In this document: piece after piece, positions 7,537 to 49,520 of the stretch
Position numbering within the stretch: the stretch's first letter is position 1
How the letters are laid out: the number at the start of each line of letters is the position of its first letter
DNA from: Ylistrum balloti
Taxonomy: Eukaryota
Assembly (NCBI RefSeq): GCF_031769215.1
Contig: NW_026782608.1
Coordinates: 682,001-746,000 of the forward strand
DNA length: 64,000 nt
Direction: 5' to 3'
Made by a program: the position numbers and the translations under genes
The notes under the pieces: generated by a model
Database searches by the model: none
Seen by the model: only the letters and a program-made list of their open reading frames with translations
What the model was told of the DNA's origin: nothing

Positions 7537-9208
7537 ATTACCAACATGAAAAATATTCCAAAAAATGTTGAACTACTAGTATTGTTTTTTATCTGTTAAA
7601 TCATTCTTCAGCCATTGCTACTGTTGTATTCTCGACTTTCACTTCTTGTGATTAGATAATCAAGTTTCCAAACGAAATGGTGCGACGCCAACATTACGCA
7701 GACCTGGCCCTGGTTGCTCAAAGGTTAATTAGAGTTAAACAGTGGTTTATAAAATTTCAAATTGCTGCCACTGAACAAACAAGAGTGTTAAACGCAAAAT
7801 TAACACTCAAAATACATCCATTTGAACTGTCTAAACAAATGTACAGTCATAAAATGACTAATGATGTTCTCAATTTTGTTTCATTAACGTTTGAAAATTT
7901 TCACTAATCACTGGTTATCTCTAACCAGCCTTTAAACAACCAGACAGTAATATTATGACGTCTGTGATGTGTATCAGGACCTATATATTTGATAATATTA
8001 TGACATATATGTAATGTATATTACAATGTATATTTGTGATCAAAGACATGCACATGCGCACACGTTTCAGACTGACCACTTAAACCCTCCCCATCGTCTC
8101 TGTGTTGCTAAATTCCTAAATGAACAAAGAAGTTTGCATGATATCCTGGGCCTCTCATTCCCTCTTATACTGCCCTCTACCTTGATCCGCAGTTGAATTG
8201 ATATGACACCAAAATAGCTGTGTTTACTTTGACTAATGGGTGCGGTAAGGGCTAAACCTTATCAGTTACAATGTGATCAAAACACGACGGGTTACAGGTG
8301 TGTACACCGTTATCGACGACATAACAGGAATACAAGCCCGAAGTAGACGAGATAGGAAGAGACATTAAAATCAATCTAAGTCTAGCATCATTAGCTTCAA
8401 GGAACCGACACACCTCACAGCCCTCCGCTTACACTCAGGTATACATCATAGAACTTTGCTTTCCAAACCTCGAGGGCATGAACATCGTTTTTGCCTGCTT
8501 CTCCTTATTATATTCTTCTTTCGCCGCCGATTCTCAAATACAAATAGATAGGATTTGACTAAATTTCACATGAGTGGTGTGCAAGAGCTTTTTCTTTTCC
8601 TTCAACGGTCATCTGACCGGTCAAACGCGGCATTTGATTGGTCATAATTTAGATACTGTCCGATTTCCATGAAAATAGGTATGTATACGTAAAGGTGACA
8701 TACGTTTTCTAGTTGGACAAGCTGACCGTCACATCCTGATTGACTGACATTTAGATGTATTCTGATTACATTTAATGTTAGAAGAAAACTGGTATATAAG
8801 TATTGTCTGACATCATACTGATGGAGTCCGATATCGGATTTAAGGAAATGGAATGAGTTTCTTATTTGTTTGATGTTTACATATTATCCGATCATGAAAA
8901 TCGATACATTAGTGCTGTCTGACAAAATGACTGTCCTCCTACTGACATCAAGTACAACTGCGGGGGTGTTTAGTGGACATTTGTGTTGGTCACTGATACA
9001 ATAAGTACATTTTTTTAATGTTTATTAGTATTAGAGGGAAAACCCAGTTTTGTGATGACTGATGAGGTAAAACAAACCTAATTTTACATGGGAATGAATT
9101 AAATGAAAATATTTCATTCGTGGCTGTTTTTTGTCATCATTGCGAAAATAATATTCTTCTAATATTTCTCTATATTGGTTTCTTGGTAGGGGATCACATC
9201 CAGCGACC

Positions 9209-12105
9209 ATGAACTTTGCTGTCTTCTTTATACTTTTAACTGTGACCTTTGCCGATGTACATAATGACCTCTTGTCGACCTTGAACTTCCTTCACGAAAG
9301 CGCAGCTTACCAGGCCCTTCCACCGGAACTGAAAGGTCTGACGGAAGAACTAGCATCCACGGCTCAGACGGGTCAACTAACAGCTTATATTGACAAGGTC
9401 GGCTTCTCGTCTGTCCTCAGCCTCCTTAGACGTAAGTTCATCTGGTGCCAAGTATTTTGTTAACTTATGTTGTTAATTTTATAGGAGGTAGTTCGTCTTT
9501 TATATTCAAAACGTTAACTTTGTGAAATTTGACCATGCTATTTTAATGCTCGGTGAAATGTGTTGAAAAAAATTACAATGCCAGGTCGAAACCTAGACTC
9601 CATTGGAATTGAATGTGTGACAAAGTAATACTTATATTCCTGTTATTTTTGTGTCTTTGACAGACTTACCCGTCGATGAAGCTCACGATGTAGAAGACTA
9701 TCTCCTAAAGGTGAACTGACACATTACTTTATGATGCTATTTTTGCACTTTATTACAGCGTTTGGCCGCTATAATACTAAAATGCTATACAGTGTTCCTG
9801 AAAACAACATACACGATATGAAAAGCTACACAGTGACATAAACAAGAAATCTATATGAAGACGGTGAAACAAAGATGCCTTGATAAGTAGAAAAAATGTT
9901 TCATAATGTGCATTATTATCCAATGAATAGGTCCTAACAGACGAGAGCATCGCCTTTCTACAAGCACAACAAGCTGCATCTACCGCCAGTACACAGAGCC
10001 CTCCAGCAACAGACAGAATGGTATTCCTTACAGTCTTTCTCTCTCATACCAGACTATTCATTTAGTCACGTTTAGACTTAATCTCCTTATTTACACCTTT
10101 ATTTACTGCCATTTTCAATATAAACTTGTTTTCCATTCAAGAAAAGGTCGTTGCGGTCAAAATCCGATTCATATCTGCATAATCTGGAGTCCACTAACGC
10201 ATATCAGAGTCTGCCACAGGAGTACAAGGGCGTGCTCAAGTCCCTTCTGACCGCCGCCTACTCCAACACCCTTACCCAGTTCATAGGAAACGACGTGAAC
10301 ATCCTTCCCAGACTCCTTCATCGTACGTAATCACTTCATACTGTATGAAGTTATAATATGTTTTGTTAACTTGATTTTACATGAATACCAAATGTTCTTA
10401 TTTACACATTATGCGATCCGGAAATGAACTTTGAACTGGATTCTAAATCTTATTTCACTTACAATGCTTGATCCTCACTGAACAAATTAAGGTTATATTA
10501 TGTGTACATGCAAGGTTAACTTTGGCAACAAAAGAAGCATAGATACAGCACCTGTTGTAGTAAATCACAATGTATTACGGACACTGAAGACAGTTGTAGA
10601 ATCGTCTTCCTTTACCTGGCATGTTTTCTAATATCCATACAGGTAAGAGGATAATAACGCTATTTTGAATTTTATAAAAAGTAAACAAGGATTTCGTAAT
10701 ATTAAGACCGTTGATTAAGATTATTATCAGTGTTTAACAAAGGGATATGAATTTGTTGACTCCAGACCTGCGTGGGTAAGGTCCTTTAAGTATTCCTGAT
10801 GAAGACTTATTTGGACATATTCACTAGTGTGTGGACGGTGTGGATTTTTCATAGTTCACATATTTCTATTTTACGGTGAATATTTCGTATTATATTAAAA
10901 TGTTTTGTCTTGGTCCCAAGTCTGGTCAAGACTATTATTTTCGTATGGTATAATGTTTCTGTAGGTTCCATGTCTGGTCGCAAGTTAAACATTTGCATGA
11001 TCAAATGATCTTTTAGGTCTCATATCTATCAAGGAATACTACTTTTGTACGATAAAATATTTTGTGTTCGTCTCTGTCTGCCCATTGGTGATACTCTTTT
11101 ACATTAAGATGTTTTGTGTCGGCCCCGTATCTGGAACAGGTTATTTACGGTAATTATAAGAACACATCAAAATCGACATAGAAGCAAATATGATCACTGT
11201 ACGTATCTGGCTTCTGTCACTCTCACAGCACGTGCAAGTAGTAAGACATGCAGTAACAAATACTCATCACCTGTAGTCAGACACCAGATCTCTTCAATAA
11301 AATAAATTTAGATAATAACCACCACTTCATGCAAGCTGAAAACTATATCATTAAACTGTTAAACACTTATATAGGTAGTGTTCGCACGTACATCACCTGC
11401 TGCCATACTTGACATACTCTTACACAAAAAACCATCGCATCCATCCACAATGTTAATGTATATTCAGGACTGGATAATATAAACATATAATATTATTTGT
11501 TGTTTTCTGTCTTCATTGCCTATATATATGGTATCTGCTGTATCTATACAATTGTAACTAGCTACTTTTCGTTACAGATATGAACCCAGGATTAGCCCGT
11601 CGACTCAATGCTTACTTTATACAGGTATGTACAGATATGTGGTAAGGATAACTTGTAACATAAAGAACTTGCCAAAGTACACATGCTTGGCACCAAGATA
11701 CACATGAAGAAAAGATTAGATGAATTCTTCCTAAACAATACAAAAGATTGAAAAATGTGTGAAATACATTGTTATTTTGTATTTACAAACTGTTAAATAC
11801 CACACTCTCTCTGTCTATCTCCCACCTCTCTCTCTCACTCTCTCTCTCTTAATCAAAAATGATATTAAATTATTATTTTGAGACATCTTGAAATGTATAT
11901 ATGCAATTGATTTTGTCTGTTATTGTAATTTGTGCCCAATTCTTTTCCTTTAAGGCAATAAAATATGTTTAAATTAAATACATCGTTAATGAAAGTTATT
12001 AATTTCTTTTAATTGCATCACAATGCACCTATATCCTTACAAAAATTATCAATTTTTCAGCAATTGCGGACAGAGGCGCAACAACATGATGACGATGACG
12101 ACTAG
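9209..12105 (+). CDS. Uncharacterised secreted protein, 210 aa, two tandem homologous helical modules, C-terminal poly-Asp
   Basis: Exons 9209-9431, 9664-9710, 9931-10020, 10142-10322, 11578-11624, 12061-12105; all GT-AG, phases 1,0,0,1,0, 633 nt open to TAG. Signal peptide MNFAVFFILLTVTFA. Modules AYQALPPELKG and AYQSLPQEYKG; ends QHDDDDD*. AATAAA at 12286-12291. Confidence 0.85.
11804..11850. repeat. Imperfect (CT)n microsatellite
   Basis: CACTCTCTCTGTCTATCTCCCACCTCTCTCTCTCACTCTCTCTCTCT in the last intron of the secreted-protein gene. Confidence 0.6.
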
Positions 12106-12861
12106 AGGACTAGTGATGAAAAATGAAATTTAAACTGTTTGAAGATTTATTTACATTATGAATGATATTACGTAATAAGTAAATGTTGATTCACCTCACG
12201 TGATAGACTAGATAAAATATCGCGTACTTAATGACAGGATGGACAGTTTGTCCACTACAGCTTATTTACAAGTTTATTGATACCTAATAAACATTTGTAG
12301 AATTGTCACAGGGGATACAATCGTTTTAAGTTCCCAATACTCTCTATAGAACAGGAATGAGGACATAGATCGAATGGATAGTGCATTGTCAGCATGATTT
12401 TTCATGAATCCTGTAACTCTATACCATTTTTTAAACATAACTCTATTTTCTATAAATTAATCTGCGAAAATGTTTGTTCGATCTGCATTTGTAGGGAAAG
12501 CAATCTTGTTTATAATCGGTGTTTGATCTAAATTGTAAAGGATTAAGAAGACACACAAGTGAATAGCACGTTTTTATACAAAATTGTAATACAGTAGAAC
12601 TAAGTGATATAGGTTAAAGCTAAAGTTTATCGCTGTATCAAATTGATAATTGAATAACAACGAGAATACTTTTCAGTGATATCTTATCAAATATGCATGT
12701 AAACTTACGAATATTACAAACAGAAGAAAGGAAATATATGCTAAATGTCTGTTTTGAAATTTAATATTAATATCCCGTTATGTGATGTAGTTAGTATGCC
12801 TTTCGATGAAGGTCACAGCTACCTATATTTTAAAGACAGGAGCCTTCTAGACACAAGATAA

Positions 12862-25800: not shown

Positions 25801-28800
25801 ACTGATACTGACTTGTTGAATTACCAAGTGATACTGACTTGTAAAGTTAAATGATACTGACTTGTTGAATTACCAAGTGATACTGACTTGTAAAGTTAGC
25901 TGATACTGACTTGTAACGTTAACTGATACTGACTTGTAAAGTTAACTGATACTGACTTGTAAAGTTAACTGATACTGACTTGTAAAGTTAACTGATACTG
26001 ACTTGTTGAATTACCAAGTGATACTGACTTGTAAAGTTAACTGATACTGACTTGTTAAGTTAACTGATACTGACTTGTAAAGTTAACTGATACTGACTTG
26101 TTGAATTACCAAGTGATGGTGACTTGTAAAGAAAACAAATGATTCCGACTGCTTCTGATATCTAGTCAAAAAACAAAAAAGGTATACTGACCCGTTAAAG
26201 TTATAAAGTCGATACCGACTGATAAAGTAACCAAAAGGCAGCGATACCGCATCCAAACAAACGACCGTGTCATAGGTATTTAATATAATACATAAAACTC
26301 ATTCGGATGCGTTTTTTCTTCTTTATTTTAATATTAATAAGTATATTATTAATATTAACAAAACTACAAGACTTCATGCGAACCTGTCCTTGAAAATGTA
26401 ATAATACTTTATGCTACTCAGACAGCGATCGACTGAACTAATGACTATTTACGACAAGAGATCGCTATCAGCTCTCACACCTCGACAATAAAATCCAACT
26501 TACAAAACCCTACAACACGATCCAATTGAGCCCGAGTTTCGAGAGTCACCTAACATTAGGATACAGATGCATTAGTCATACAGTATGACGTGAGCCTGAA
26601 GTTTGGTTTGTACGGATTGACTGGCAAAAGAAAACTCGGTCATGCCAACAAAATGACTTGTCTGACCACAGATGGGAACGTAGCACCTCTTAAAGCTGAT
26701 ATCACGTCTAAAGAGGGTTGCACATAGAACATGCATTCCAAGCATTGATATGTACACTTATTTGTGCATTTTGAGCACCCCTCCCGTGCCTTCAGTTGTA
26801 CACTTAAGAGGGTATTTACGTCCATGAAGCACTGAGATAGATCTTTTTACATATAAATGACATTTGTGCTGATACAAACATTAAAAGCTTTATATATGGA
26901 AACTTTTAGACTACACCCATAATTAATATCAAGTTTAAATACTTCACAACGTGTGCGATATGGGTCTTCACTATAATTGTAATTTAAACATTAGCTGTTT
27001 AAAATCACAGTTGATCACACAACAGAAAACTTTAGCAATGTTGCACAGCTTCAACTATTATAGATACAAAACACGTGTGCACTGAATGATGCCATATAAG
27101 TTGTACACCGACATGCTGCATATATCAGAATTTTATTAGTAAAAGGATGAATAAAAATACAGCGGGGTAAAGATGTTAAATACTTATTTAAATCTTTACA
27201 TATTTAAGTATTCTTTAACTTATTTAATGTTATATTTAGGCATTGTTTAAAAGTTAAAGTATACATTTTTCATTCTGACAAACTACGATATCCTAATCTC
27301 TTTACATACTTCTTCGAAGATCCAAATTTTCACGAATTTTCTAACAGCTTCAAGGAAAAAGGCATTTGTCATTGAAGTCAGGAAATGGTCTATAATTTTC
27401 TCTTTATTCAATTTTCAAAGAATTTCTTTATTTCTTGTTTATTCCATCCTCCAGTCATAAATAGAGAAAAGTAGATACATCTCCATACATATTCATTCTA
27501 CGCATGTCTCTGATCTACCCACATACGGATTGTTCGGCCACTTTTGTTCCAAGTCGATAATGGAGCTGATCCTGGCTGAAAATCTAGACATCCCTTTTTT
27601 CTTGTATATAGGTAAACCCCCGTGAAGATTATTTAATCAGCTTCACTATTTATAGAAAACACAGCTACTTTCATTCCAAGTAGTTAATCCTATCCCTTCT
27701 ACGCAGCAGGTTAATCCAACAACCATCCCACTTGATGTTGTAGACATCTTTCTCTACAGATAATCTAACCGCCTTTGTTCTCTGGATAATTACCTTCATT
27801 CTATACAGAAAACACATTAGCTTTATTTCCATTAGGTTATGGTGCTGCTGCTGATTAATGGCACAAAACTTCTGGAAGATAATCCAAACTGATTTTCTTC
27901 TGGGGATAATCCTGACGATTTAATTCGACGAACGGGTTGAATATTGAACCAGCTGGATCATGTTGGGGATTAAAACGTTTCTCCCCCAAAACACGATGTA
28001 AATGATATCTAAATGTTCTAAATTTATGGATAACCTAAGGACGTTTTAAGCATAATGTTATTTCAAATCATAACGGCTACGTTGATGTAAAAATATGATT
28101 GAAATGGTGTAAACAATAAAATGCTAGACCGATGTGAAATGTTAAAACAAGTAGGCTAATGAAACGACAACATAATCAATTAACTAGTGCAACATTATGG
28201 TAATCTGTGTACCGGTATAATAACTTGTGTAATAGTGTAATAACTTGTGTAATAGTATGATAACTTGTGTACCAGTATAATAACTTGTGTAATAGTGTGA
28301 TAACTTGTGTAATAGTGTGATAACTTGTGTACCCGTATAATAACTTGTGTATCAAAATAATAACTTGTGTAACAGTATAATAAATTGTGCAATAGTATAA
28401 TAATTTGTGTACCAGTATAATAACTTGTGTACCAGTATAATGACTTGTGTACCAGTATAATGACTTCTGTACCAGTATAATGACTTGTGTACCATTATAA
28501 TGATTTGTGTACCAGTATGATAACTTGTGTACCAGTATGATAACTTGTGTAATAGTATGATAACTTGTGTACCAGTATAATAACTTGTGTACCAGTATAA
28601 TAACTTGTGTACCAGTATAATGACTTGTGTACCAGTATAATGACTTGTGTAATAGTATGATAACTTGTGTACCAGTATGATAACTTGTGTGATAGTATGA
28701 TAACTTGTGTACCAGTATGATAACTTGTGTGATAGTATGATAACTTGTGTAATAGTATGATAACTTGTGTACCAGTATAATAACTTGTGTACCAGTATAA

Positions 28801-31314
28801 TAACTTGTGTACCAGTATAATGACTTGTGTACCAGTATAATGACTTGTGTAATAGTATGATAACTTGTGTACCAGTATGATAACTTGTGTGATAGTATGA
28901 TAACTTGTGTAATAAATAGTATGATAACTTGTGTACCAGTATAATAACTTGTGTAATAGTATGATAACTTGTGTACCAGTACAATAACTTGTGTACCAGT
29001 ATAATAACTTGTGTAATAGTATGATAACTTGTGTACCAGTATAATAACTTGTGTACCAGTATAATAACTTGTGTAATAGTATGATAACTTGTGTACCAGT
29101 ATAATAATTTGTGTGATAGTATGATAACTTGTGTAATAGTATGATAACTTGTGTACCAGTATAATAACTTGTGTAATAGTATGATAACTTGTGTACCAGT
29201 ATAATAACTTTTGTACCAGTATAATAACTTGAGTACCAGTATAATAACTTGTGTAATAGTATGATAACTTGTGTACCAGTGTGTACCAGTATAATAACTT
29301 GTGTGATAGTATGATAACTTGTGTAGTAGTATGATAACTTGTGTACCAGTATAATAACTTGTATACCAGTATAATAACTTGTGTACCAGTACAATGACTT
29401 GTGTACCAGTATAATAACTTGTGTAATAGTATGATAACTTGACCGATGTAACATTGTAATTATATCATCAAAACAGTTATAATGATTAGGCTAATACAAA
29501 ACAATCATGCTTACTTAACTGATACAAGTTATGATACCCTGACCTGAAGTGACGATAATTGAATAATACAAACGCTATGGTAACTTGACTAATACAAACG
29601 CTATGGTAACTTGACTAATACAAACGCTATGGTAACTTGACTAATATAAATCTTATGGTAACTTGACTAATACAAACGCTATGGTAACTCGACTAATACA
29701 AACGCTATGGTAACTTGATTAATACAAATCTCATGGTAACTTGACTAATACAAACGCTATGGTAACTCGACTAATACAAACGCTATGGTAACTCGACTAA
29801 TACAAACGCTATGGTAACTCGACTAATACAAACGCTATGGTAACTCGACTAATACAAACGCTATGGTAACTCGACTAATACAAACGCTATGGTAACTTGA
29901 CTAATACAAATCTCATGGTAACTTGACTAATACAAACGCTATGGTAACTTAACTAATATAAATATTATGGTAACTTGACTAATACAAACGCTATGGTAAC
30001 TTGACTGATACAAACGCTATGGTAACTTGACTGATACAAACGCTATGGTAACTTGACTGATACAAACGCTATGGTAACTCGACTAATACAAACGCTATGG
30101 TAACTTGACTTATACAAATCTTATGGTAACTCGACTAATACAAATCTTATGGTAACTCGACTAATACAAACGCTATGGTAACTTTACTAATACAAATGCT
30201 ATGGTAACTTGACTGATACAAACGCAATGGTAAAAATATGATAAGTTATGAAACGAAAGATATGATGACTGATTGAATGCGACAGATTACAAATGGACTG
30301 ATATAGATATTACTGATAAAACAGGTTGGGATTACCTCACAGTTTCGGATAACAATGTAATACATTAAACAAAAGACTTTAATAAGTAGTACGCCCTGTA
30401 ACAGCAGATACAAATAGTGACTTCACAAAAACATGACTACGTTTCTATCAGCTTGTTCCGAGAATTTCCTGTTTGTTCAATTCTGTCGGTCAGTTCTGGC
30501 GTAAAAACTGGTTACAATCTATCAATAACGACAAAAAACGACACCGTCTATTTTCAGCGTACAAATAAATAGGATGGTTGTCAGATACATCAGGTAATTC
30601 TCCCTATAGTTCAGTCAGAATGCGTACATGTATAACGGTAACCAAATTGATTAGCTCTAGACCTTGTTTGTTTAGGCAAGATAAATTTAAAGGTGATGAG
30701 TGCATTTAACAAGCTTTTTTGGGTAATGCTATGCAGTTTAATTCGTTGTTTGTCTCTACTATACCTTATTCTAACTTTGTATTAAATTGTGTTATTCACT
30801 TGTGTGTCTTTTGTGCAAATTTGCCTCAATCTCACAATTGCTTAGTGGTTGGAGCCATTACAATTTATTCTTTCAAATAGATAGAAATTTAAAACGAAAC
30901 ACAAACTAAAATATCACTAATGATACTTTTAAAAAACATAAAGAACTCTCACAGAAATGGGATGAAAAGTACAAATTTAAAACGATCTGTTTAAAACGTA
31001 ATATTAAAAAAATCAGAGCCAAGTTTATAGGATGAAAAGGTAAAATATAATGAGACAAATAGATGTCCAAATACAACATGCCCATGCTAGGTTAAATATT
31101 AAAACATACACTACCTGGGACTGTAGGCAGAACAATTTTCTCCAATTCCCCTAGCACATTCATCACAACAGCTGCACGGCAGGGCCACCCTCTCACATCC
31201 TTCCCGAAGTTTGGGGCATATGGTGTGTCCGGTGCATGGGGGACACCGTGGTGCTCCCTGGACTACGATTGTACACACTACACAGAAACAAAGAAACAAC
31301 ACTGAATCTCGCAT
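22874..31314 (-). CDS. Secreted single IGFBP-domain (IB) protein, perlustrin/SIBD-like, about 113 aa
   Basis: Exon 31314-31115 (signal peptide plus CPPC..C..C..PCSCCDEC..C, donor AG|GTAGT, phase 2) and exon 23831-23736 (RCATGLMCMNMRGEALERVPRIMKTYHGICQN, acceptor TTTATAG, donor GTAAGC) together give all 12 IB-domain cysteines. The terminal exon 22919-22874 (VLNIETHIKSLKTSR*) is less certain; an alternative acceptor near 23370 would end the protein QNV*. Confidence 0.85.
23175..23265 (+). mobile_element. Degenerate mollusc-type interspersed repeat fragment
   Basis: CATGGCGGTTGTC...AGCAGAAGATATTTACTCTTCCGGAATACCTGGTC resembles the common molluscan repeat GGATGCTTACTCCTCC..AGCACCTG. A related stretch (TACTTACCCTTCGGAGAGCA) lies near 37655. 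Confidence 0.35.
25068..26130. repeat. 23-bp minisatellite with interspersed 26-bp variant units
   Basis: Unit TAACTGATACTGACTTGTAAAGT; variant ...TGAATTACCAAGTGATACTGACTTG recurs at 95-bp and then 72-bp periods. Confidence 0.95.
26572..28006 (-). pseudogene. Decayed coding remnant in the IB-protein intron, possibly CYLD-like ubiquitin hydrolase
   Basis: Fragments in shifting frames with stops. After an AG at 26833-26832 it reads CFMDVNTLL...CSKC-x7-YQCLEC and then VPICGQTSHFV, compared by eye with CYLD LNITDLL...CRIC-x7-YECREC and AVLCIETSHYV. The upstream pieces (27250-28006) look protein-like but are unassigned. Confidence 0.3.
28200..29440. repeat. 20-bp minisatellite, about 60 copies
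   Basis: Unit GTATAATAACTTGTGTACCA with ATGA/ATAA and TAATA/TACCA/TGATA variants. It generates the spurious ORFs 28195..28392, 28352..28984 and 28495..29454. Confidence 0.97.
29565..30232. repeat. 26-bp minisatellite, about 25 copies
   Basis: Unit CTAATACAAACGCTATGGTAACTTGA with CTCGA and TCTCA/TCTTA variants. Confidence 0.96.
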
Positions 31315-36767: not shown

Positions 36768-39700
36768 ATGTATGACCAACAGCTTCTTTTGGTCATTGTG
36801 ACCATATGTGCCACAAGCATAAACAGTCAGTTCTATTCGGGGAGTGCAGGACATGGAGGAACCTACCAAGGCAGTTTTGGGTACCCGAGGTCAGGTAATA
36901 GCTACCCAGAAGCAGGGGGATACTATGCTGACGCATGGACTGGTTTTCCTACAGGTCATATGCAAAGGATTCGGCGATCAGTTGTTGACACCACCAGACG
37001 AGTTGAAAAGGTAATGTTGATAAATTATAGATAAATGATGTCATTGTTGAATTAGTTAGGTTCAGTAAATCGTAAAATAACGTCATTTTATGATGAGTTG
37101 TCTCAATAGTTGTTTTCAAGTGAAAGTTTTATATAAATGGCATACCATAGTCGAAAAGCGTTGATACATAACTAAACTATAAGTATAGTGGGGGAGACCT
37201 AATTCTACAGCCAAAAACATCTGGAATTTCCAACATTCTGTTAAAGACGATACTCTTCTGAAGGGTGATCGTAACCCCTGGTAGTTCAAGGATGACTTCA
37301 TGATATGTCCCCGTCACTTATGTTAGATATTGACAACATCGCCACCAGTGAAATAATGAGGAATAACAATGTTCATCGGGTATCAAACTCATCAATTGAA
37401 TAATGCTTTATGTCATAATACCTCACGAATGTGTTAATTAATTTGTATTAAGTATTAGTCAGTGTTAGGTCTCCATGTTATACCAATGGGGATTTGTTTT
37501 GAAAACTAATGTAAATATCAGCGTTAGATATGAGACCTTTAAGGTAGTCCTTGATTGGGTATTGCATGAAATGGTCAACAATGGGTGGGGATGATATATA
37601 TATATACTTGTGTAATTTACCTACCAGAGACCAGTCGTAAAATGTAGATACCGGTACTTACCCTTCGGAGAGCAAGGCTTGAGAATTTCCTAGTTAGCAT
37701 TCGAATCGATTTCCAGAATTTCTTTCGGTTATATGGGTATGCTTTGTTCACATGATGCCATGTGATTTTTCATTTCGTTCATTATGTGTTAAGCTTAGGT
37801 GTTCAAACCATCTTTCTGACTGATCCTTCTGTTCTCTTTTGACTCTGTCCTACCTTTTTATTTCAAACAATAATTAGGAAGCCACACAGCAGCAGATAAG
37901 AACAGTTGATAAGACGAAAAGCAGGTGATATCTCATTTGTCTTTCTGCTCGATTCGCCCGTTCATTTTTTTTTTCTAGTTTCTGCGTTTTTGTTTCAAGC
38001 AAGGGTCGAAAGGACACAAAGCAGTCGAAAAATTCTGAAAGTATAGTAGATCACTCGAAAAACTTTTGGAACAAGTCTGTAATTTGGCCCTTCTTCCATT
38101 ATACACGAATTCGCCTCATGCCAATTTCACCCTCGAATGCTTCTATAAAAGGGATGCATAAGTGTAACAAACCTTTCCATGGTCGAAAAGGGCAAAAAAG
38201 GAAATGGAGGGCGAAATTTTTTCATGGTATAATGTATCTAATTGTTTATAATGAATTCGCTTGAATTTGCCTAAAAATCACCTACTAATGTTTACACACT
38301 GTGATGTAACAAAAACATCATTATTTCCAATCAGTGTTAGATTTTAATTTCTGCACCTTTTCAGAGCTTTTGATAACGAATTGGCCGTTGTGACTTTACC
38401 TTTGTAACATGAATACAAATGAACCCTTGAAATAAGTTAATGTACATCATCACTATTGTACAGGTTACAGACCAAGTGTATGTGGCCATGGGTGGTAAGG
38501 CGCTGGGGAACTCCATCATGATAATAGCACCTGATGGTCTGATCATAGTGGACACTTCCGACAGTCATCAAGCTGCCAGCCTGATGCTAGAAGACTTTCG
38601 GAACATCACTTCAGCCCCTGTGAAGGCCATCATCTATACCCATCACCATATGGATCACACTGGAGGTGCCACTGTATGTAACACGTCTTCGAAAACCAAA
38701 AAAGTTTACATCAATTCTAACCTGATTATATTTGACCTTTACTTTCATGTCAATTTTTATGCGATAAACAAATTATAATTCAAAAGGCTAAGCATTAAAA
38801 GCATAGCCATTCGCGTGTTAAATCAATTAACTGATGTTTAATTTAAACAAAGGTTTCCTCTATTTAACTTTGTAAAATATTTACAAAGGAAATATTTCAT
38901 AAAAGACTTCGCTAACACATAACAGAGAATGGTATTAATGGTCTATTTTGTTCACTTCAATAGGGGGAAATATTTTATTTGGTGTGTTTTTGAGAACAAA
39001 ATGAAATATAATTAACAAGATATCACAAGTTGTTTTCATGTATTCATACCTCAGGCCTTTATTGAAAATTCAACTGCGACCCCGGATATTTGGGCTTACA
39101 AGGATCTTCCAAGCGATTTGGAGTCCTACTTCGCGTATGCTTCCAGAGCACGATATGCCAGGACTATGCGCCAGTTTGGTGTGTTCGTCAATGGAAGTCA
39201 GAACTCAATCGATTTCGGGAAAGAAGGGACCACATTTGGATTCGTTTACCCCAACAAATTTCTGAAAGACACGGAAATGGACGTCGTTATCGCAGGTAAA
39301 GTGAATTTCGCAACATCTAACCAAGCTGACCTGCAGTAAATTCTAGTAGCCTTAGACGTATGGCTGAAATGCCATTATAACGTAGTCAATTCTTCACGAT
39401 TTCATAGATTCACTTTCAAATATATTAAAATCTAGACTCATAGATTCACTAACGATTCTTGGAAAGACGACATAGTTTTATAATGCAGTTAAATCATTAG
39501 TTGGCTCTACTTATCTTGTTTTAATGATTTCTATTGTAAGAGTATATCCTCTCGGTCCGATTCGCCAGCTAGATATACACCACAAACTAAACGATATTTC
39601 TTACAAGATACTAACAACAGTATTTCACATATTATACATTACGAAATATTACATAAGGATCCATTTTACATAGTATCAATATGCATCACTATGACAGTGA

Positions 39701-40826
39701 CAGAGGTTCCATTTTTTCCGCAGGATTGAAAGTGCGGCTTGTGAGAGTTGAAGGCGAAACTTCAGACCATATGGGCGTATATATCCCAGAATGGAACATG
39801 TTCATGTGCGGCGATACGTTCTACAATGCCTTTCCCAACATCTATACAATCCGAGGGGCAAAGGTGCGGGATGCCAAGGCTTGGTATAAATCTCTAGACT
39901 ACATCATTGATTTGAATTTGACATACCTAGTACCAAGTCACAGGTCTGCAATAACTGGACAACAAACCATTATGGACATGCTTATCCCTCACAGAGACGG
40001 CATCCAATTCATTCATGACCAGACCCTCCGCTACATCAACAAGGGACTCACGCCAGAAGAAGTCGTTCGCAAAGTAAAACTCCCGCCATCCCTAGCCAAT
40101 GTTTCTACATTGCGAGAAGAGTACGGTATGGTAGGATGGTCTGTCAAAGGGGTCTTCCAAATGTATTTAGGCTGGTTTAGTGGTGACCCTAAAGACCTCT
40201 TTCCCCTCACAACAGGCGAAAAGGCACAACATATGGCCGATCTGGCTGGTGGTGTGAATAACCTGGTCACAGCTGCTCGGGCAGCAGTTGACAAGGGAAA
40301 TGCACAGTGGGCTCTAGAACTAGCCTCTTATGCACTTGCACTGAACGCGTCTGACGATACGGCAATGAAAGTGAAAGTTGACAGTCTGAATGCTATTGCC
40401 GACCAACAAATAAACACGAACGCAATTAACTATCTGAGAACATCCGTCCTCGAGACGATGGGACAGCTGGATCTTTTCGATCAGAGCGCTATCACCACCG
40501 ACCATATCAACTCATTAGACGTCAGACATATATTTGATATATTGCCGTCAGCATTCATGCCAGAAGTCTGCGAAAACGAAAAGTTCACAATTCTGTTGAA
40601 TTTTACAGATACGGGGAGAATACTCTCTCTCCAGAATCGCAATTCTGTTTTAGTCGTGAGGGAAGACAAAGTTCCAGAAGCTTACACTCTCAAAATGGAC
40701 ATCACTGAAAATCGATTCAAAAAGTTTGTTATGACGAGGATCAACCAAGGCCAAACCCCACATATTCTGTTCAAAAGTTATGGATTCCGGTTACTGCAAA
40801 AATGTTTTGACCTTAGAAAAATGTAA
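36768..40826 (+). CDS. Secreted alkyl/aryl sulfatase, SdsA1/BDS1 family (metallo-beta-lactamase fold, dimerisation domain, SCP2-like C-terminus), 598 aa
   Basis: Exons 36768-37010, 38464-38673, 39055-39295, 39724-40826; phases 0,0,1; 1797 nt open. Motifs IVDT, THHHMDH (HxHxDH), GETSDH, GDTF, PNIYTIRG..VRD, YGMV.WS.K..FQMYLGWFSGDP..L.PL. AATAAA at 41009-41014. Confidence 0.9.
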
Positions 40827-44143: not shown

Positions 44144-47100
44144 CTATTCAGAAGATATAGCATACTGTTTAGCAGTGGCATTGGCTAGAAGATTGAATGC
44201 TGAAAAATCCACAGTGGCTACAACTTCCTGTGACTGGTCAACCATTGTAATCTGATACACCTGGTCACTAACACCATCCTTGACCACTGCTGTGTTCTTA
44301 GTGCCCTCCTCCAATGTCTCCACTGGCTGTGCACTACTACCTTTGAGTATTACAGTTTGATAAGGCTGACTGGTGCCTGATTGATGCTGTATCTTCTCCA
44401 CTTCATTATTGATTACAGCCTGTAATTGTTCAAGTGCATCCTGCCCCAATAAACTGTTTGTTTCCATTACATAAGTAGTTGTTTCTTTTGGATCTTCAGT
44501 ACTCAACGTTTCCAATATCACTTCCTCTTTCACTACATCCTCCTTTTTAGGCTTATGCTTCTTTAGATGACGATGGTATGTTGACTGGTCATGAAATTTC
44601 TCCTCACACTTGTTGCAACTATAAGGCTTATTACCAATATGAATGTTAAGGTGTTCGTTGAGGTATTGTTGTCGTGTGAAGCGTTTTGGGCATATGTCAC
44701 ATTGGAATGGTTTTTCTCCAGTGTGTCGCAGAATATGGCGATCTAATTCTCCTAAAAAGTAAGAACAATAAAAATACATTATTTACCAACTCCTTTGCTT
44801 TAATATTAATATACGAGAAATCAATCAACTTTTTTTATAGATCAAAATATTTCATGTCATTTGCAAAGAGTGGAAACAACCACTAATGTATATTTAACAA
44901 TGTTCTGGCAAGTAAAATTCACCAAAACCAACACATGTTGCTCAATGAAATCATCCAGATTATTTCTACTTCTACATATTGAACCGTGTCTCGGTTACAC
45001 ATTGTCTTGTCAGTCTACTGTAACAATACAAGTTCTTGGTGTATTAAAATGGGAAATTAAAGACTAAAAGTGGATGTGCACACCTCATATCTAATATTGT
45101 AACAAATTTGTTGTGTTTATTAATATATTTCCAACATGGTCAAAACATTCTTTCTGACTATATCTTCAGAGTCTGCTTGGCAAAATGATGTATCGATTTG
45201 AAATGGAATTGTTACTGTGAAAGAATAATGACATTGAATTAAACCTGGTACTCCAGCATGATAAGCTACGGTTCTGCCAACATGCAACTGATCATATTAC
45301 GGTTTTTTTCTTATATGTATACCTTTAGTGAAGAATGAGAAACTACAGTCTGAACAGTTGTACGTCTTCTCCTCTAGGTGACGTTTTTTGTGTGAGAGGA
45401 GGTTTGCACGCTGCTTGAAGGACTTTCCACACAGCTCACACAAGTGTTTCTTGTCACCAGTGTGTACCATCATGTGCGTTTTCAGTGTGACACTCTGAGT
45501 GAAACCTCTACTGCAGATCTCACACCTGGCCAACAAGTATTAAGCATATTAAACAGGAACATCAAATCACAGAATCAAGAATGCCTGTCACTGGGAAAAC
45601 TATGTACTGACATAAAGAGATATTAAATACCCAAGAGCTGCAGAAGTAGCATTTTATTTGTAAATTTGGGATCAGAGCTTTTTGTTATACTTTGGGTACA
45701 AATTGACTTAGTACAGTAAAGCATATGAAATTTTCCAGGGTTTAACAGCAAGTTTTAAGGACCTTGGAAACATAACTACCCATTCTAGCCCAAAAATGTC
45801 CTAAGAAACCCCTGAGAATGCAAAGTGTGATTCTAACAAGATAGACAACACTCTGATATAATATATAAATAGAATTTCTTTCCCATAAATTAAATTAAAT
45901 GTAAAATAAATTTTTAATGAATTCTACAGTCAGCACATAACACAAAAATGTGCGAAACCAATGTTATTTATGTGTATATTTATATAGAATTTCATTTGTA
46001 CACATAAAATTCAGGTACAATTACAGCAGGTAATTCTAACCTGAAACTATCATCTCCACATTCATTACTACATATGATGCATTGCGTTTTGTTTATTGAT
46101 ACTTTAACATTCTCGACCTATCCTCTAAAAATGGCAATAAAAAGAACCACTTAAAAATCTCAACCTTGCAGTACTTACTGCAAGTTATATAGGTGAAAAT
46201 TTATCTTGTTTATTCATCTTTTCTTTTTATTTATCCTTTTTCTCATTAAAATATGTATACTACTTCAAGTCATTTGATATCTTCATAAAAACATCAACTA
46301 TACTGTATATACGTATTAACAAGGCACTACCTTAGAATCCTATTAATGAGGCACTGCCTTGGAACATTGATTACTAATACTCTTCCCTGTTCTTCATACT
46401 GTTACACTTTAAACGTAAACTTTCTTGGAGATTTATACAACTCACAGTATGGATATATATTTCTATACATAACTTACACATAGGGTTTCTCGCCCGTGTG
46501 AGTCCTGTTGTGTATTATAAGGCTTTTCTTCTCTGTGAAACTTTTTTCACACAGATCACAAGAGAAAGGTTTCTCTCCAGTGTGACTGAGCTCATGCCGT
46601 TTCATATTCTGCTTAGTTGTGAAAGTCTTGTCACATTCTTTACAGGAAAATGGTCTGGCTCCAGTATGCTTTCTCTGGTGAACTAAAATAAAATGTTTTA
46701 AAATAATTAAATACCCGTTTGTTTTGTGGTGTTTTAAAATACAATATTGATGATATGGAAATTGCAAATTTCAGAATTTTTAATTTTGTACTCTGATTAA
46801 ACAGGAAGTATGCAGAGCAAATCTTCACAGTAATTCCTAGCAAATGTAATTAAACAAGAAATCATACAAATGTTTCATGAATTTATTATTTTGATAATGA
46901 CACACAAACCATATCTTGTTGCTAGTCTTACCATGAAGAGCTCCAGAATTTGATAACTTTATTCCACATGTTTTACATTCCCAAACCAATTCAATATTTC
47001 CTAGTTTATTCCTTTCCTCTCGTGGTCGATTCTGAGCATGCTGCCGTTTTCTTGGTTCAGAATTAGAGCTGGTTTCTGGTTTACTCAGACGGTTTCTTCT

Positions 47101-49520
47101 TCTTCTTTTTCTACTGGTTCTCACTGCTTGTTCCTCATCAGCATCATTATTGTCGATGTCTTTACCATCAATTTCCTTATCAATATCTTCACCATACAAA
47201 TAATCCAAAACCTTCTCTGGAGTCAATATGTCTCCCTCCAGATTTATGTTGTCCTTTCTTTGTTTTATTCGTTTACTGGTTCTCCCTGGAGAAGAAGTTC
47301 TCAAATGTTTTCTCTTTTTTTTACTTTTATTACTTTCAGAATGTTCATCATAATTAGGTACAATGTGAGAGTCTGCTTTAGGAAATTGATTGTCTTGGAT
47401 TTCATGAAGAACTTCATCACTATAATCATTCTTGTTAGATCTACTGCTTTTAGGTACAGTCTGTTCATGAGGTGCATCCTTGTTGTCTTGTTTGGAAACA
47501 TTTTCCGCTGTAGGTGATGAATTTACTGAAATGTTATCTACAAACTGGTGAATATTTGAAGGCTCTGCTTTCACAGGTGATGAATAACTCTGAAACTGAC
47601 CCTGCAGTAACATACTAAGTTTTTCTGGCGTCAAAATTTCTCCTTCTGCAAAGTCTTGTGGCAGATGGATTTCTATTGTCTGACTGTCTTCTCTTACTTC
47701 ACACAGAATTTCTGTTGGGACTGTGATTTCTTTTTTCAGCATGCTCACCATACTTTCCTTTGTGGGAGCAGCTGGCACTGCTTCTATTTCAACAATGTCA
47801 TTTCTATTCTGGAGGTATTCTGCATTACTACTAGTCTCATCAAAACTGTTGTGAGTATCAACTTCAAATCTTACATCCTGCTGATTTGTGCCTGTAAACT
47901 GTGAATGCATATCATCCGGTGGACAATACTGTGCCACTGACAGATTCTGACTTGACAAGGTGCTGGTCACAGGAGACTCTGAATATGAAACTTGATTTGA
48001 AGTGGAAACCATGTCAAAAAAGTCTTGAATGTCCGATGAGACCAGCACACTTTCTTCATTTGTAGTGTTTTGATTGGCTTGAATTTGTTGTCTGGAGTCA
48101 TCTGATGGTAGACATTCCTCTTGAATGTTAAAGCTTGGATCATCACTTTTACCTTCATCAGCATCTTCACATCCCTCTTGAATGCTATGAGATGCTTCAT
48201 CATTCTTAATTTCATCAGCACCTTCACATTCTTTCTGACTGTTATTACTAGCTTCATCCTCATTAAATTGATGGCGATCACCAAATTTCTCTGAAATGTT
48301 TACACTTGCATCTTCAGTCTTCTTTCTATCAATGTCAGCAGATTTATTTGATGGGTTAATAGTATTTGATATCACATCCCAGAAGTCATGCAGTTGTCTT
48401 TTCTGAGCATCAGGGATTAATGCCACCATTCCAACTGCTTCTGCCACCTGTTTTGAATAATAAAAAGACTACAATAGTTACCAAACTGAACAAATACTTG
48501 GTGAACAAGTATTGTTATTACATATACATGAAAAATAATATACTATGTAGGATTAATGATAATCATAAAACATCTCAAGAAATAGGAATAACAAATTTTT
48601 TTTACTGACAGATGATGAATAGACGCAAGGTCATTTGAACAATCCACCAGTTAATGATATTGGACTAAAATACATTCTGTATATAATATAACCCCTTCAA
48701 ATGCCTCTGTCCAAACCCCACCCCTAATCCAGCATAATCACCAATTTCACAGACAGAAAGGATAACTGAAGGATTTGGATTAGTTGACAGGTTTTCCATC
48801 TCTGTGACTCCTTCTGTTCCGTGGGTATCATCTCACTAAAAGTCACAAAAGTCAGTGTTCTGGCGATGTTATAACTGAAGGGGTAGCAACTGGGTACTAA
48901 TTAACCAATTTTGTTTGACAAAACATTGTGCAGCTTAATACATACAGTAAAGCACAGTTGGTGGGACAAAATGAAGTATTCAACTAATCCAATGGTTCTA
49001 TCTACTTCTATTTACCCAGCAGTCATGCAGACACTTTTAAATCTGTCAGCACAGCTAGGAAGAAACTAGAGGATCTAGGATGGTGATAAGGGTGTGAATC
49101 TTAAGCATGCATGGCATTGAATTTCGATGCAAATGTAGCAGTATCATTTGGATCAAGAATAGTATCAGAAAAATGTAATATGCTGCGATTAGGGACATAC
49201 ATGTTCCAAGTAGTCCAAGTTATTACCCATATGAGGGGTTGTGTCCAACCTGTCAACAAAGAGATATATATCTCCATGCTTTCTATTTTAGATCACTGAC
49301 TTTGACCAGTAACAATTTTTGAACAAACAAAACATAGCCCCGTGTGTTACTTGTGTCAGTATATCTAACGATTCGTGTCAAGAACAGACTTTAGACAACA
49401 GATGATATTGGGTCATCATACACTGCGATCACACATTTTACATTAATGTATATACGACATTCTTACCTTCGATTTGAAAAGCTCAAGAATGTCTTGTTCT
49501 TTGCTCGGCTTCTCTGCCAT
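44144..49520 (-). CDS. C2H2 zinc-finger protein, 861 aa, 8 tandem fingers after a long acidic low-complexity region
   Basis: Exons 49520-49467 (MAEKPSKEQDILELFKSK), 48447-46932, 46682-46478, 45525-45323, 44751-44144; phases 0,1,2,1; 2586 nt open. Eight CxxC...HxxxH fingers with HTGE(A/D)KP-type linkers. Confidence 0.92.
48608..48670 (+). mobile_element. Solo HINE-like 3' end in zinc-finger intron 1
   Basis: GACGCAAGGTCATTTGAACAATCCACCAGTTAATGATATTGGACTAAAA aligns with the reverse complement of 41101-41165. Confidence 0.4.

What the first reader, a model, noticed from the sequence alone, without database searches (positions are those of the whole stretch)
9209..12105. Unannotated secreted two-module protein with a duplicated exon pair, a KR processing site and a poly-Asp tail
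Seen: signal peptide; module 1 LNFLHESAAYQALPPELKGLTEELASTAQTGQLTAYIDKVGFSSVLSLLRH-LPVDEAHDVEDYLLK; an Ala/Ser/Thr/Gln linker exon; KRSLR; module 2 LHNLESTNAYQSLPQEYKGVLKSLLTAAYSNTLTQFIGNDVNILPRLLHH-MNPGLARRLNAYFIQ; tail QHDDDDD. The duplication is visible in the gene structure: each module is a phase-1 large exon followed by an exactly 47-bp exon (9664-9710 and 11578-11624). The mature protein has no Cys and looks all-helical, and module 1 is acidic while module 2 is neutral to basic. I recognise no family. Inference: a proprotein cleaved at KR into two homologous ~70-aa helical domains, possibly a new secreted family (shell matrix, mucus, adhesive or lipid-binding); the acidic tail would suit Ca2+ binding.
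Basis: partly seen in the sequence, partly recalled or inferred. Interest (0 to 1): 0.72.

Follow-up and report, generated by a model that had tools for sequence, protein, structure and literature searches.

The report
Secreted two-module helical protein gene
This is a real, conserved scallop gene for a small secreted protein made of two related helical domains joined by a likely protease-cutting site; it belongs to a mollusc-wide protein family that nobody has described or assigned a function.

Summary
Six GT/AG exons (9209-12105, +) encode a 210-aa, Cys-free protein. It has a signal-peptide-like start, two homologous helical modules, an RMKR site and a DDDDD end. Each module is a phase-1 exon plus an exactly 47-bp exon.

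It is not unannotated: the product equals RefSeq XP_060081350.1, "uncharacterized protein LOC132560697" of the scallop Ylistrum balloti.

Pecten maximus and Mizuhopecten yessoensis have orthologs (71-72% identity) with the same six exons. dN/dS over the module exons is 0.10-0.15.

A profile of the module found about 68 protein clusters. Every named one is a bivalve or gastropod, and all are "uncharacterized". They carry one to seven modules. Y. balloti also has two-module paralogs in tandem arrays.

There is no Pfam match, no PDB sequence match and no convincing fold match. AlphaFold2 models are confident and all-helical.

A dibasic or RxKR motif lies before nearly every later module across the family. 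This supports convertase cleavage, but only by inference.

No RNA or proteomic data for this gene could be reached. Tissue and biochemical role remain unknown.

Verdict: a genuine member of an undescribed mollusc secreted-domain family, of moderate interest.

The parts
9209..9431 (+). Exon 1 (223 nt, ends in phase 1). Encodes the signal-peptide-like residues 1-15 (9209-9253) and the large part of module 1 (residues 16-74). The last base, C, is the first base of the His75 codon.
   Evidence: Donor is C|GTAAGT. The orthologous exons in Pecten and Mizuhopecten are 226 nt with the same donor.
9664..9710 (+). Exon 2 (47 nt). AC completes His75, followed by 15 codons for the last helix of module 1.
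   Evidence: Exactly 47 nt in all three scallops.
9931..10020 (+). Exon 3 (90 nt). Ala/Ser/Thr/Gln-rich linker, residues 91-120. Its last two codons (10015-10020, Arg-Met) are P4-P3 of the RMKR site.
   Evidence: Low AF2 confidence at residues 110-120. Only about 47% identical to the orthologs, against 67-100% for the module exons.
10142..10322 (+). Exon 4 (181 nt, ends in phase 1). Its first two codons (10142-10147, Lys-Arg) complete RMKR. The rest is the large part of module 2 (residues 123-180). The last base, C, starts the His181 codon.
   Evidence: 181 nt and C|GTACGT in Pecten and Mizuhopecten too. RxKR is conserved.
11578..11624 (+). Exon 5 (47 nt). AT completes His181, followed by 15 codons for the last helix of module 2.
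   Evidence: 47 nt in all three scallops, with 93-100% amino-acid identity.
12061..12105 (+). Exon 6. C-terminal tail, residues 197-210, ending in five Asp (12088-12102), then the TAG stop (12103-12105).
   Evidence: The tail is acidic in the orthologs: AADDEED in Pecten, nine Asp in Mizuhopecten.
12286..12291 (+). AATAAA, a candidate polyadenylation signal 181 nt after the stop codon.
   Evidence: Read directly from the sequence. Not tested with transcripts.

Best explanation
The region is the complete coding part of a functional gene, LOC132560697 of the scallop Ylistrum balloti. It encodes a 210-aa secreted, cysteine-free protein. After a 15-residue signal peptide come two homologous modules of about 80 residues, each a small bundle of five to six helices. 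A poorly conserved Ala/Ser/Thr/Gln linker joins them.

The module defines an undescribed family restricted, as far as seen, to bivalves and gastropods. Members carry one to seven modules. Every module is interrupted at the same phase-1 position inside a conserved His codon.

Most likely mechanism (inferred, not shown): the protein is a small polyprotein. In the secretory pathway a furin/prohormone-convertase-type protease would cut after RMKR (residues 119-122). This would release two products:
- an acidic N-terminal product, about 11 kDa, pI 4.4;
- a near-neutral C-terminal product, about 10 kDa, carrying the poly-Asp end.

The folded modules are the strongly conserved parts, so they, not the linker, are the functional products acting outside the cell. 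What they bind or signal is unknown. The His- and Asp-rich spacers in relatives make divalent-cation binding the leading guess, but only a guess.
For: Gene model:
- All splice sites are canonical, and each exon translation matches RefSeq product P0001 piecewise.

Conservation:
- Orthologs in Pecten maximus (72%) and Mizuhopecten yessoensis (71%).
- They have the same six exons, including both 47-nt exons and the 181-nt exon 4.
- dN/dS is 0.10-0.15 over the module exons.
- In a second individual's DNA, 1 of 31 substitutions and 0 of 5 indels fall in the 633 exonic nt of the 4201 nt examined.

Family:
- The profile search gave 70 clusters at E<=1e-3 and 23 at E<=1e-10.
- Named members come from Mizuhopecten, Saccostrea, Mya, Mytilus, Pinctada, Potamilus, Haliotis, Batillaria, Littorina, Plakobranchus and Elysia. 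All are 'uncharacterized'.
- Own-genome two-module paralogs have the same signal+module first exon, the same C|GTAAGT donors and the same split His codon.
- First and later modules form old separate lineages: 3 label changes on the tree against 14 expected.

Fold:
- AF2 pLDDT is 85.5 (full length) and 89.2 with pTM 0.73 (one module), all helical.

Cleavage:
- RxKR is conserved in the three scallops.
- A dibasic motif is present in 36 of 40 inter-module linkers.
- Inside module cores, [KR]R occurs only 0.26 times per 100 residues.

Transcription of relatives:
- Uninterrupted three-module ORFs lie on 919- and 932-nt contigs.
- Genomic copies have an intron in every module, so these contigs are spliced transcripts.
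Against: - No RNA-seq run holding this locus could be found. The only run is DNA, so splicing and expression of this gene are not directly shown here.
- No proteomic evidence for cleavage exists.
- Four Mytilus-type linkers have only a single Arg, and five junctions in gastropod proteins have no linker or basic site at all. Separation of modules is therefore not universal.
- The 45 junctions counted include near-duplicate proteins and are not independent.
- Signal peptide was judged by eye.
- Function is not constrained by any homology. The best structural matches (Z 7.1 or less) are in the range expected for generic helical bundles.
Confidence: 0.7

Rival explanations
1. The protein is secreted but stays intact. 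It would be a two-domain extracellular structural or matrix protein (shell, mucus, byssus/adhesive or egg coat). The basic cluster in the linker and the acidic tail would serve charge interactions or mineral binding rather than processing.
For: - The acidic tail is conserved among scallops.
- Asp/Ser-rich and His-rich spacers and a Thr-rich mucin-like linker occur in relatives.
- Some family junctions lack any dibasic site.
- Tandem gene arrays are typical of secreted structural or defence proteins.
Against: - The dibasic motif sits at a fixed position, directly before the first helix of later modules, in bivalves and gastropods alike.
- In scallops it is a full RxKR furin motif.
- Adult-shell-less sacoglossans (Plakobranchus, Elysia) have the most Asp-rich members.
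- No motif of the Pinctada member was found in the one readable supplement of the P. fucata shell proteome paper. This is a weak negative.
Confidence: 0.2
2. It is a neuropeptide or prohormone-like precursor of the regulated secretory pathway. The bioactive parts would be short peptides from the linker or tail, and the helical modules would act as pro-regions or granin-like sorting domains.
For: - Signal peptide, dibasic sites and acidic spacers after KR are present.
- Several relatives (Mizuhopecten, Mytilus, Mya and Haliotis members) end in Gly, Gly-Lys or Gly-Arg, the classical amidation signal.
Against: - The conserved parts are the 75-80-residue folded modules. pN is 0-0.15, and exon 5 is identical between Ylistrum and Pecten.
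- The linker exon is only about 47% identical.
- This gene has no C-terminal Gly.
- The paralog is absent from the 63 precursors of the scallop ganglion neuropeptidome supplement.
- The LASGLVamide precursor I suspected is an unrelated multi-copy short-peptide precursor.
Confidence: 0.08
3. It is a gene-prediction artefact or a decaying pseudogene with chance open frames.
Against: - Six exons with canonical sites are conserved in length and phase in three scallop genera.
- dN/dS is about 0.1.
- The AF2 model is confident.
- The family spans two mollusc classes.
Confidence: 0.02

Closest known systems
Two-module paralogs in the same genome and their orthologs (e.g. Mizuhopecten LOC110450103, Mytilus XP_071122944, Saccostrea LOC133190052, Mya LOC128217387), all 'uncharacterized'
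   Same: - The same module, hit by the same profile.
- Signal peptide plus first module in one exon.
- A phase-1 intron splitting a conserved His codon.
- A small second exon per module.
- A dibasic (RR/KR) start of the second-module exon.
   Different: - Only 25-35% identical to the window protein.
- The small exon is 56 nt rather than 47 nt in the first module.
- Several end in an amidation-type Gly instead of an acidic tail.
- In Y. balloti they lie in tandem arrays with a period of about 11 kb.
Nematode polyprotein allergens/antigens (NPA, e.g. ABA-1). Comparison from general knowledge.
   Same: A secreted polyprotein of small, Cys-poor, all-helical units, separated by RxKR-type convertase sites and released as individual domains.
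   Different: - No sequence match in Pfam scans.
- No structural match among the top 50 of about 48,000 PDB representatives.
- Units here are about 80 residues rather than about 130, and there are only two of them.
- Lipid binding is untested.
Insect allergen repeat proteins (Bla g 1 type, Pfam PF06757). Comparison from general knowledge.
   Same: Secreted, Cys-free, tandemly duplicated all-helical repeats of roughly 100 residues.
   Different: - No HMM hit at E<=10.
- No fold hit.
- Those repeats are not separated by convertase sites.
Neuropeptide/prohormone precursors and granins
   Same: Signal peptide, dibasic or RxKR sites, acidic spacers, and amidation-type C-termini in some relatives.
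   Different: - The conserved units are folded 80-residue domains rather than short peptides.
- Not listed among scallop neuropeptide precursors.
Pfam DUF4476 (PF14771), the name UniRef gives to the Mytilus galloprovincialis homolog A0A8B6GV93
   Same: Only the database label on one family member.
   Different: - The current PF14771 model does not hit that Mytilus protein or any other family member at E<=10.
- In the scallop genome it hits neither this gene nor its paralogs.

Membership tests
   P0001 is hit at E 7.5e-47 with two stretches. It helped build the profile, so that score is partly circular. Independent support: exon 1 alone finds the own-genome paralogs at E 3e-4 across the genome and 3.5e-9 against the loci.
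   The window gene has C|GT at 9431 and 10322. The same is seen in the paralog and in the Pecten and Mizuhopecten orthologs. Read-through 'RK/SK/GK' ends in fragmentary models from other species point to the same site.
   The hydrophobic N-terminus was judged by inspection. RMKR lies at residues 119-122. 36 of 40 linkers in the family carry a dibasic site.
Pfam DUF4476 (PF14771) | HMM score above the gathering cut-off of 22.5 bits | tested here: not met
   No hit at E<=10 for the window protein, the Mytilus protein that carries the name, or the 41 modules. The genome scan hits other loci only, all below the cut-off.
Pfam DUF4473 (PF14747, nematodes) | HMM match | tested here: not met
   This was only a language-model lead, score 0.79, below the tool's own reliability line. 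There is no Pfam hit. The lead vanished for the mature protein.
Nematode polyprotein allergen (NPA/ABA-1) | Tandem helical units separated by RxKR sites | tested here: met
   Two units with RMKR between them. This is an architectural resemblance only.
Nematode polyprotein allergen (NPA/ABA-1) | Sequence or fold homology of the unit | tested here: not met
   No Pfam hit. Not among the PDB matches listed.
Nematode polyprotein allergen (NPA/ABA-1) | Fatty-acid/retinol binding | not testable with these tools
   Needs a binding assay.
Neuropeptide precursor | Conserved short peptides flanked by dibasic sites, often with a C-terminal Gly for amidation | tested here: not met
   Conservation lies in the 80-residue modules, not the linker. 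This gene has no C-terminal Gly. A C-terminal Gly is present in a paralog clade only.
Acidic (Asp-rich) shell matrix proteins | Long Asp-rich domains and presence in shell proteomes | tested here: inconclusive
   Only five terminal Asp residues here. No motif of the Pinctada homolog was found in the single readable supplement of PMC4660305. No paper holds any accession of the family.

The most novel reading that the evidence does not exclude
The module is a new protein fold family that molluscs deploy as convertase-processed polyproteins of one to seven units. This would be a lophotrochozoan counterpart of the nematode polyprotein carriers. The released ~10-kDa helical bundles would act as extracellular carriers or buffers of metal ions or small ligands, or as hormone-like factors. 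The amidated C-termini in one clade mark passage through regulated secretory granules.
Probability: 0.3. Interest if true: 0.6.

Novelty: new variant of a known kind. Interest (0 to 1): 0.45.

Why it matters
The gene itself is already in RefSeq, but only as an 'uncharacterized protein'. Three things are new here:
- It belongs to a coherent, mollusc-wide family of secreted proteins.
- That family has a conserved ~80-residue helical module, a conserved intron position and conserved convertase-type sites.
- No Pfam model, solved structure or paper could be found for it.

Defining the family gives mollusc genome annotators a domain to name. It also gives experimentalists a tractable target: small, Cys-free, confidently modelled domains that should express easily.

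If processing and ligand binding are confirmed, it would be a second, independent example of the polyprotein strategy known from nematode NPAs.

Tried and rejected
- **LASGLVamide precursor.** I suspected it because relatives end in -VVG/-LVG. The scallop precursor printed in the PMC5996578 supplement is a multi-copy short-peptide precursor with no resemblance. The paralog's motifs are absent from that supplement.
- **DUF4473.** Protein-atlas lead at score 0.79. No HMM support, and the lead disappeared with the mature protein.
- **DUF4476.** A UniRef label on a Mytilus homolog. Not reproducible with the current Pfam model.
- **Fold searches.** Foldseek against PDB with the full-length and single-module models gave nothing below E 0.9. 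VIA-align against about 48,000 PDB representatives gave a best Z of 7.1, which is generic helical. The ESM Atlas gave TM<=0.61 to unrelated proteins.
- **PDB sequence-profile search.** Nothing below E 0.14.
- **RNA evidence.** The single run that holds the locus is DNA from another individual.
- **Word-index protein searches with alignments A2 and A3.** These were saturated or blank and added nothing beyond the scallop orthologs.
- **Literature.** No paper in the library holds any accession, LOC number or short motif of the family. The P. fucata shell-proteome supplement has no match.
- **Joining exons.** The joined product was used only as the stored database protein P0001, which a search returned. 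It was checked against each exon translation separately.
- **Promoter scan.** The bacterial promoter scan is irrelevant for a eukaryotic gene and is disregarded.
Full report
**Observation**

I read window 8900-12400 and checked every proposed exon. The coding exons are:
- 9209-9431
- 9664-9710
- 9931-10020
- 10142-10322
- 11578-11624
- 12061-12105

All are flanked by AG...GT. Exons 1 and 4 both end one base into a codon (C|GTAAGT and C|GTACGT). Each is followed by an exactly 47-nt exon whose first two bases complete a His codon. My first script put the end of exon 4 three bases too far. The sequence itself, the orthologs and the piecewise match to the database protein fix it at 10322.

The translations of exons 1 and 4 are 41% identical over 39 residues. 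E-values within the window are 2e-4 and 8e-5. The product has no Cys. Module 1 is acidic (net -8, pI 4.6), module 2 is basic (net +3, pI 9.5), and the protein ends in five Asp. An AATAAA lies 181 nt past the stop.

**Handling of the spliced model**

The profile search returned a stored 210-aa protein, P0001. Each exon translation is an exact substring of it, at residues 1-74, 76-90, 91-120, 121-180, 182-196 and 197-210, with His at 75 and 181. All full-length analyses used that stored protein.

**Identity of the gene**

P0001 is RefSeq XP_060081350.1, "uncharacterized protein LOC132560697 [Ylistrum balloti]". The window is from a scallop. The gene is annotated, though without a name or function.

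**Reality and constraint**

Orthologs:
- Pecten maximus LOC117331421 is 72% identical and Mizuhopecten yessoensis LOC110460983 is 71% identical.
- Their loci (L022, L023) have the same six exons: 226, 47, 93/90, 181, 47 nt plus a terminal exon, with the same donor motifs.
- Summed over four indel-free codon blocks of the module exons, dN/dS is 0.10-0.15 with dS 0.7-0.9.
- The linker exon is far less conserved, at about 47% identity.

Run evidence:
- The only public run holding the locus is DNA of another individual.
- Its contigs carry 31 substitutions and 5 indels across the 4201 nt laid.
- Only one substitution (12080 A>G, Gln203Arg) falls in the 633 exonic nt, where about 4.7 would be expected (Poisson P about 0.05).
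- No RNA run was available, so splicing of this very gene is not directly shown.

**The family**

Exon 1 finds weak paralogs in the same genome on contigs C40, C1018 and C773. On C40 they form three tandem copies about 11 kb apart.

One copy was dissected. It has:
- a signal peptide plus first module in one exon, ending C|GTAAGT;
- a 56-nt small exon beginning AT, so again a split His codon;
- a second-module exon that begins Val-Arg-Arg and also ends C|GTAAGT.

A profile of six module exons (A1) was searched against 1.84 billion representatives. It gave 70 proteins at E<=1e-3 and 23 at E<=1e-10. Two of the 70 (P0038, P0048) are long repetitive proteins and look spurious.

Every member that carries a name is a mollusc protein labelled uncharacterized or hypothetical. 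The species are Mizuhopecten, Saccostrea, Mya, Mytilus, Pinctada, Potamilus, Haliotis, Batillaria, Littorina, Plakobranchus and Elysia. Members have one to seven modules.

A module tree is poorly resolved. Even so, first and later modules cluster by position: 3 label changes against 14 in shuffles, with 0 of 500 shuffles as low. The duplication is therefore old, not specific to this gene. The window's module 2 is a very long branch.

Two three-module homologs lie as uninterrupted ORFs on 919- and 932-nt contigs from a sequencing-run assembly and a JGI sample. Genomic copies have an intron in every module, so these contigs are spliced transcripts. The family is expressed.

**No known family or fold**

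- Pfam gave nothing significant for the exons, for 19 full-length members or for 41 isolated modules.
- PDB sequence profiles gave nothing below E 0.14.
- AlphaFold2 with family alignments gave confident all-helical models. Full length: pLDDT 85.5, pTM 0.53, with the linker at residues 110-120 poorly defined. Single module: pLDDT 89.2, pTM 0.73, with helices at module residues 2-12, 15-18, 22-36, 40-47, 49-58 and 61-80.
- Foldseek against PDB found nothing below E 0.9.
- An exhaustive VIA-align pass over about 48,000 PDB representatives peaked at Z 7.1. The tool's own notes place this within the background for helical bundles.
- The ESM Atlas gave only unrelated rows.
- UniRef labels one Mytilus homolog "DUF4476 domain-containing". 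The current PF14771 model hits neither that protein nor the scallop loci.
- A DUF4473 lead from the protein atlas (score 0.79) had no other support.

**Processing**

Residues 119-122 are Arg-Met-Lys-Arg, spanning the exon 3/4 junction. This meets the furin minimal consensus R-X-K/R-R (established knowledge). The orthologs have R(K)RSKR and RRSKR at the same place. In Pecten, a NAGNAG acceptor adds or omits one Lys, giving isoforms X1 and X2.

Across the family, the 45 junctions between modules break down as follows:
- 36 carry a dibasic motif, usually directly before the first helix of the next module.
- 4 have a single Arg (Mytilus type).
- 5 have no linker at all.

[KR]R occurs only 0.26 times per 100 residues inside module cores. 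The junction counts include near-identical proteins, so they overstate independence. The pattern nevertheless holds in both bivalves and gastropods.

In gastropods the basic pair is often followed by Asp-, Asp/Ser- or His-rich spacers. Members from six different clusters end in Gly, Gly-Lys or Gly-Arg, the classical amidation signal. The window protein does not.

These features argue that family members pass through convertase processing. That is an inference from sequence only.

**Function**

Nothing constrains it.
- The acidic tail is conserved in charge, but only within scallops.
- The most Asp-rich members come from sacoglossan slugs, which lack an adult shell. This argues against a shell-specific role.
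- The paralog is not among the 63 precursors of the scallop ganglion neuropeptidome.
- No paper in the searchable library mentions any accession or motif of the family.

My preferred reading is a small polyprotein whose folded modules are the active extracellular products. Divalent-cation or small-ligand binding is a guess.

**Verdict**

This is a genuine, constrained gene and a member of an undescribed mollusc-wide secreted-domain family with prohormone-style architecture. "Unannotated" is wrong. Interest is moderate.

Noticed in passing
G000:C40:425619-450189 (loci L005-L007, L010, L013, L014, L016, L017); also C1018:1767-14204 and C773:394979-403850: Tandem array of two-module paralogs of the window gene: three copies about 11 kb apart on C40. 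Near-identical copies lie on two other contigs and may be haplotigs or further duplicates. A further small exon-like piece (NDNHDVETYL type) lies about 700 nt upstream of each gene's first exon. I did not place it in a gene model.
   Followed up: partly
L003 = G000:C417:750861-753986: Long tandem array of an 11-codon (33-nt) unit that reads EYTNILSNL(T/I)(P/S) in an open frame of at least 241 aa. It matched exon 4 only through low complexity.
   Followed up: no
window 39681-40826 (+): A 381-aa open frame with strong Pfam hits to alkyl sulfatase dimerisation (E 1e-34) and C-terminal domains. It fits the alkyl sulfatase gene that another first-stage note places at 36768-37010.
   Followed up: partly
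window 44144-44779 (-): A 211-aa open frame with C2H2 zinc-finger domains.
   Followed up: no
window 46837-48447 (-) and 28495-29454 (-): Long open frames of 536 and 319 aa without any Pfam match at E<=1e-3. Nature not examined.
   Followed up: no
window 12080: A>G difference in another individual's DNA changes Gln203 to Arg. Arg is the residue found at that position in the Pecten and Mizuhopecten orthologs.
   Followed up: partly
L022:7037-7042 (Pecten maximus ortholog): A NAGNAG acceptor at exon 4 explains RefSeq isoforms X1 and X2. They differ by one Lys inside the basic cleavage motif, RKRSKR against RRSKR.
   Followed up: yes
P0036 / P0074: A protein filed in EukProt under the gregarine Digyalum oweni sits in the same 90% cluster as a Littorina saxatilis protein. 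It is most likely host (periwinkle) contamination of the parasite transcriptome.
   Followed up: no
P0082 (Mytilus galloprovincialis A0A8B6GV93): The UniRef name 'DUF4476 domain-containing protein' is not reproduced by the current Pfam model PF14771.
   Followed up: yes
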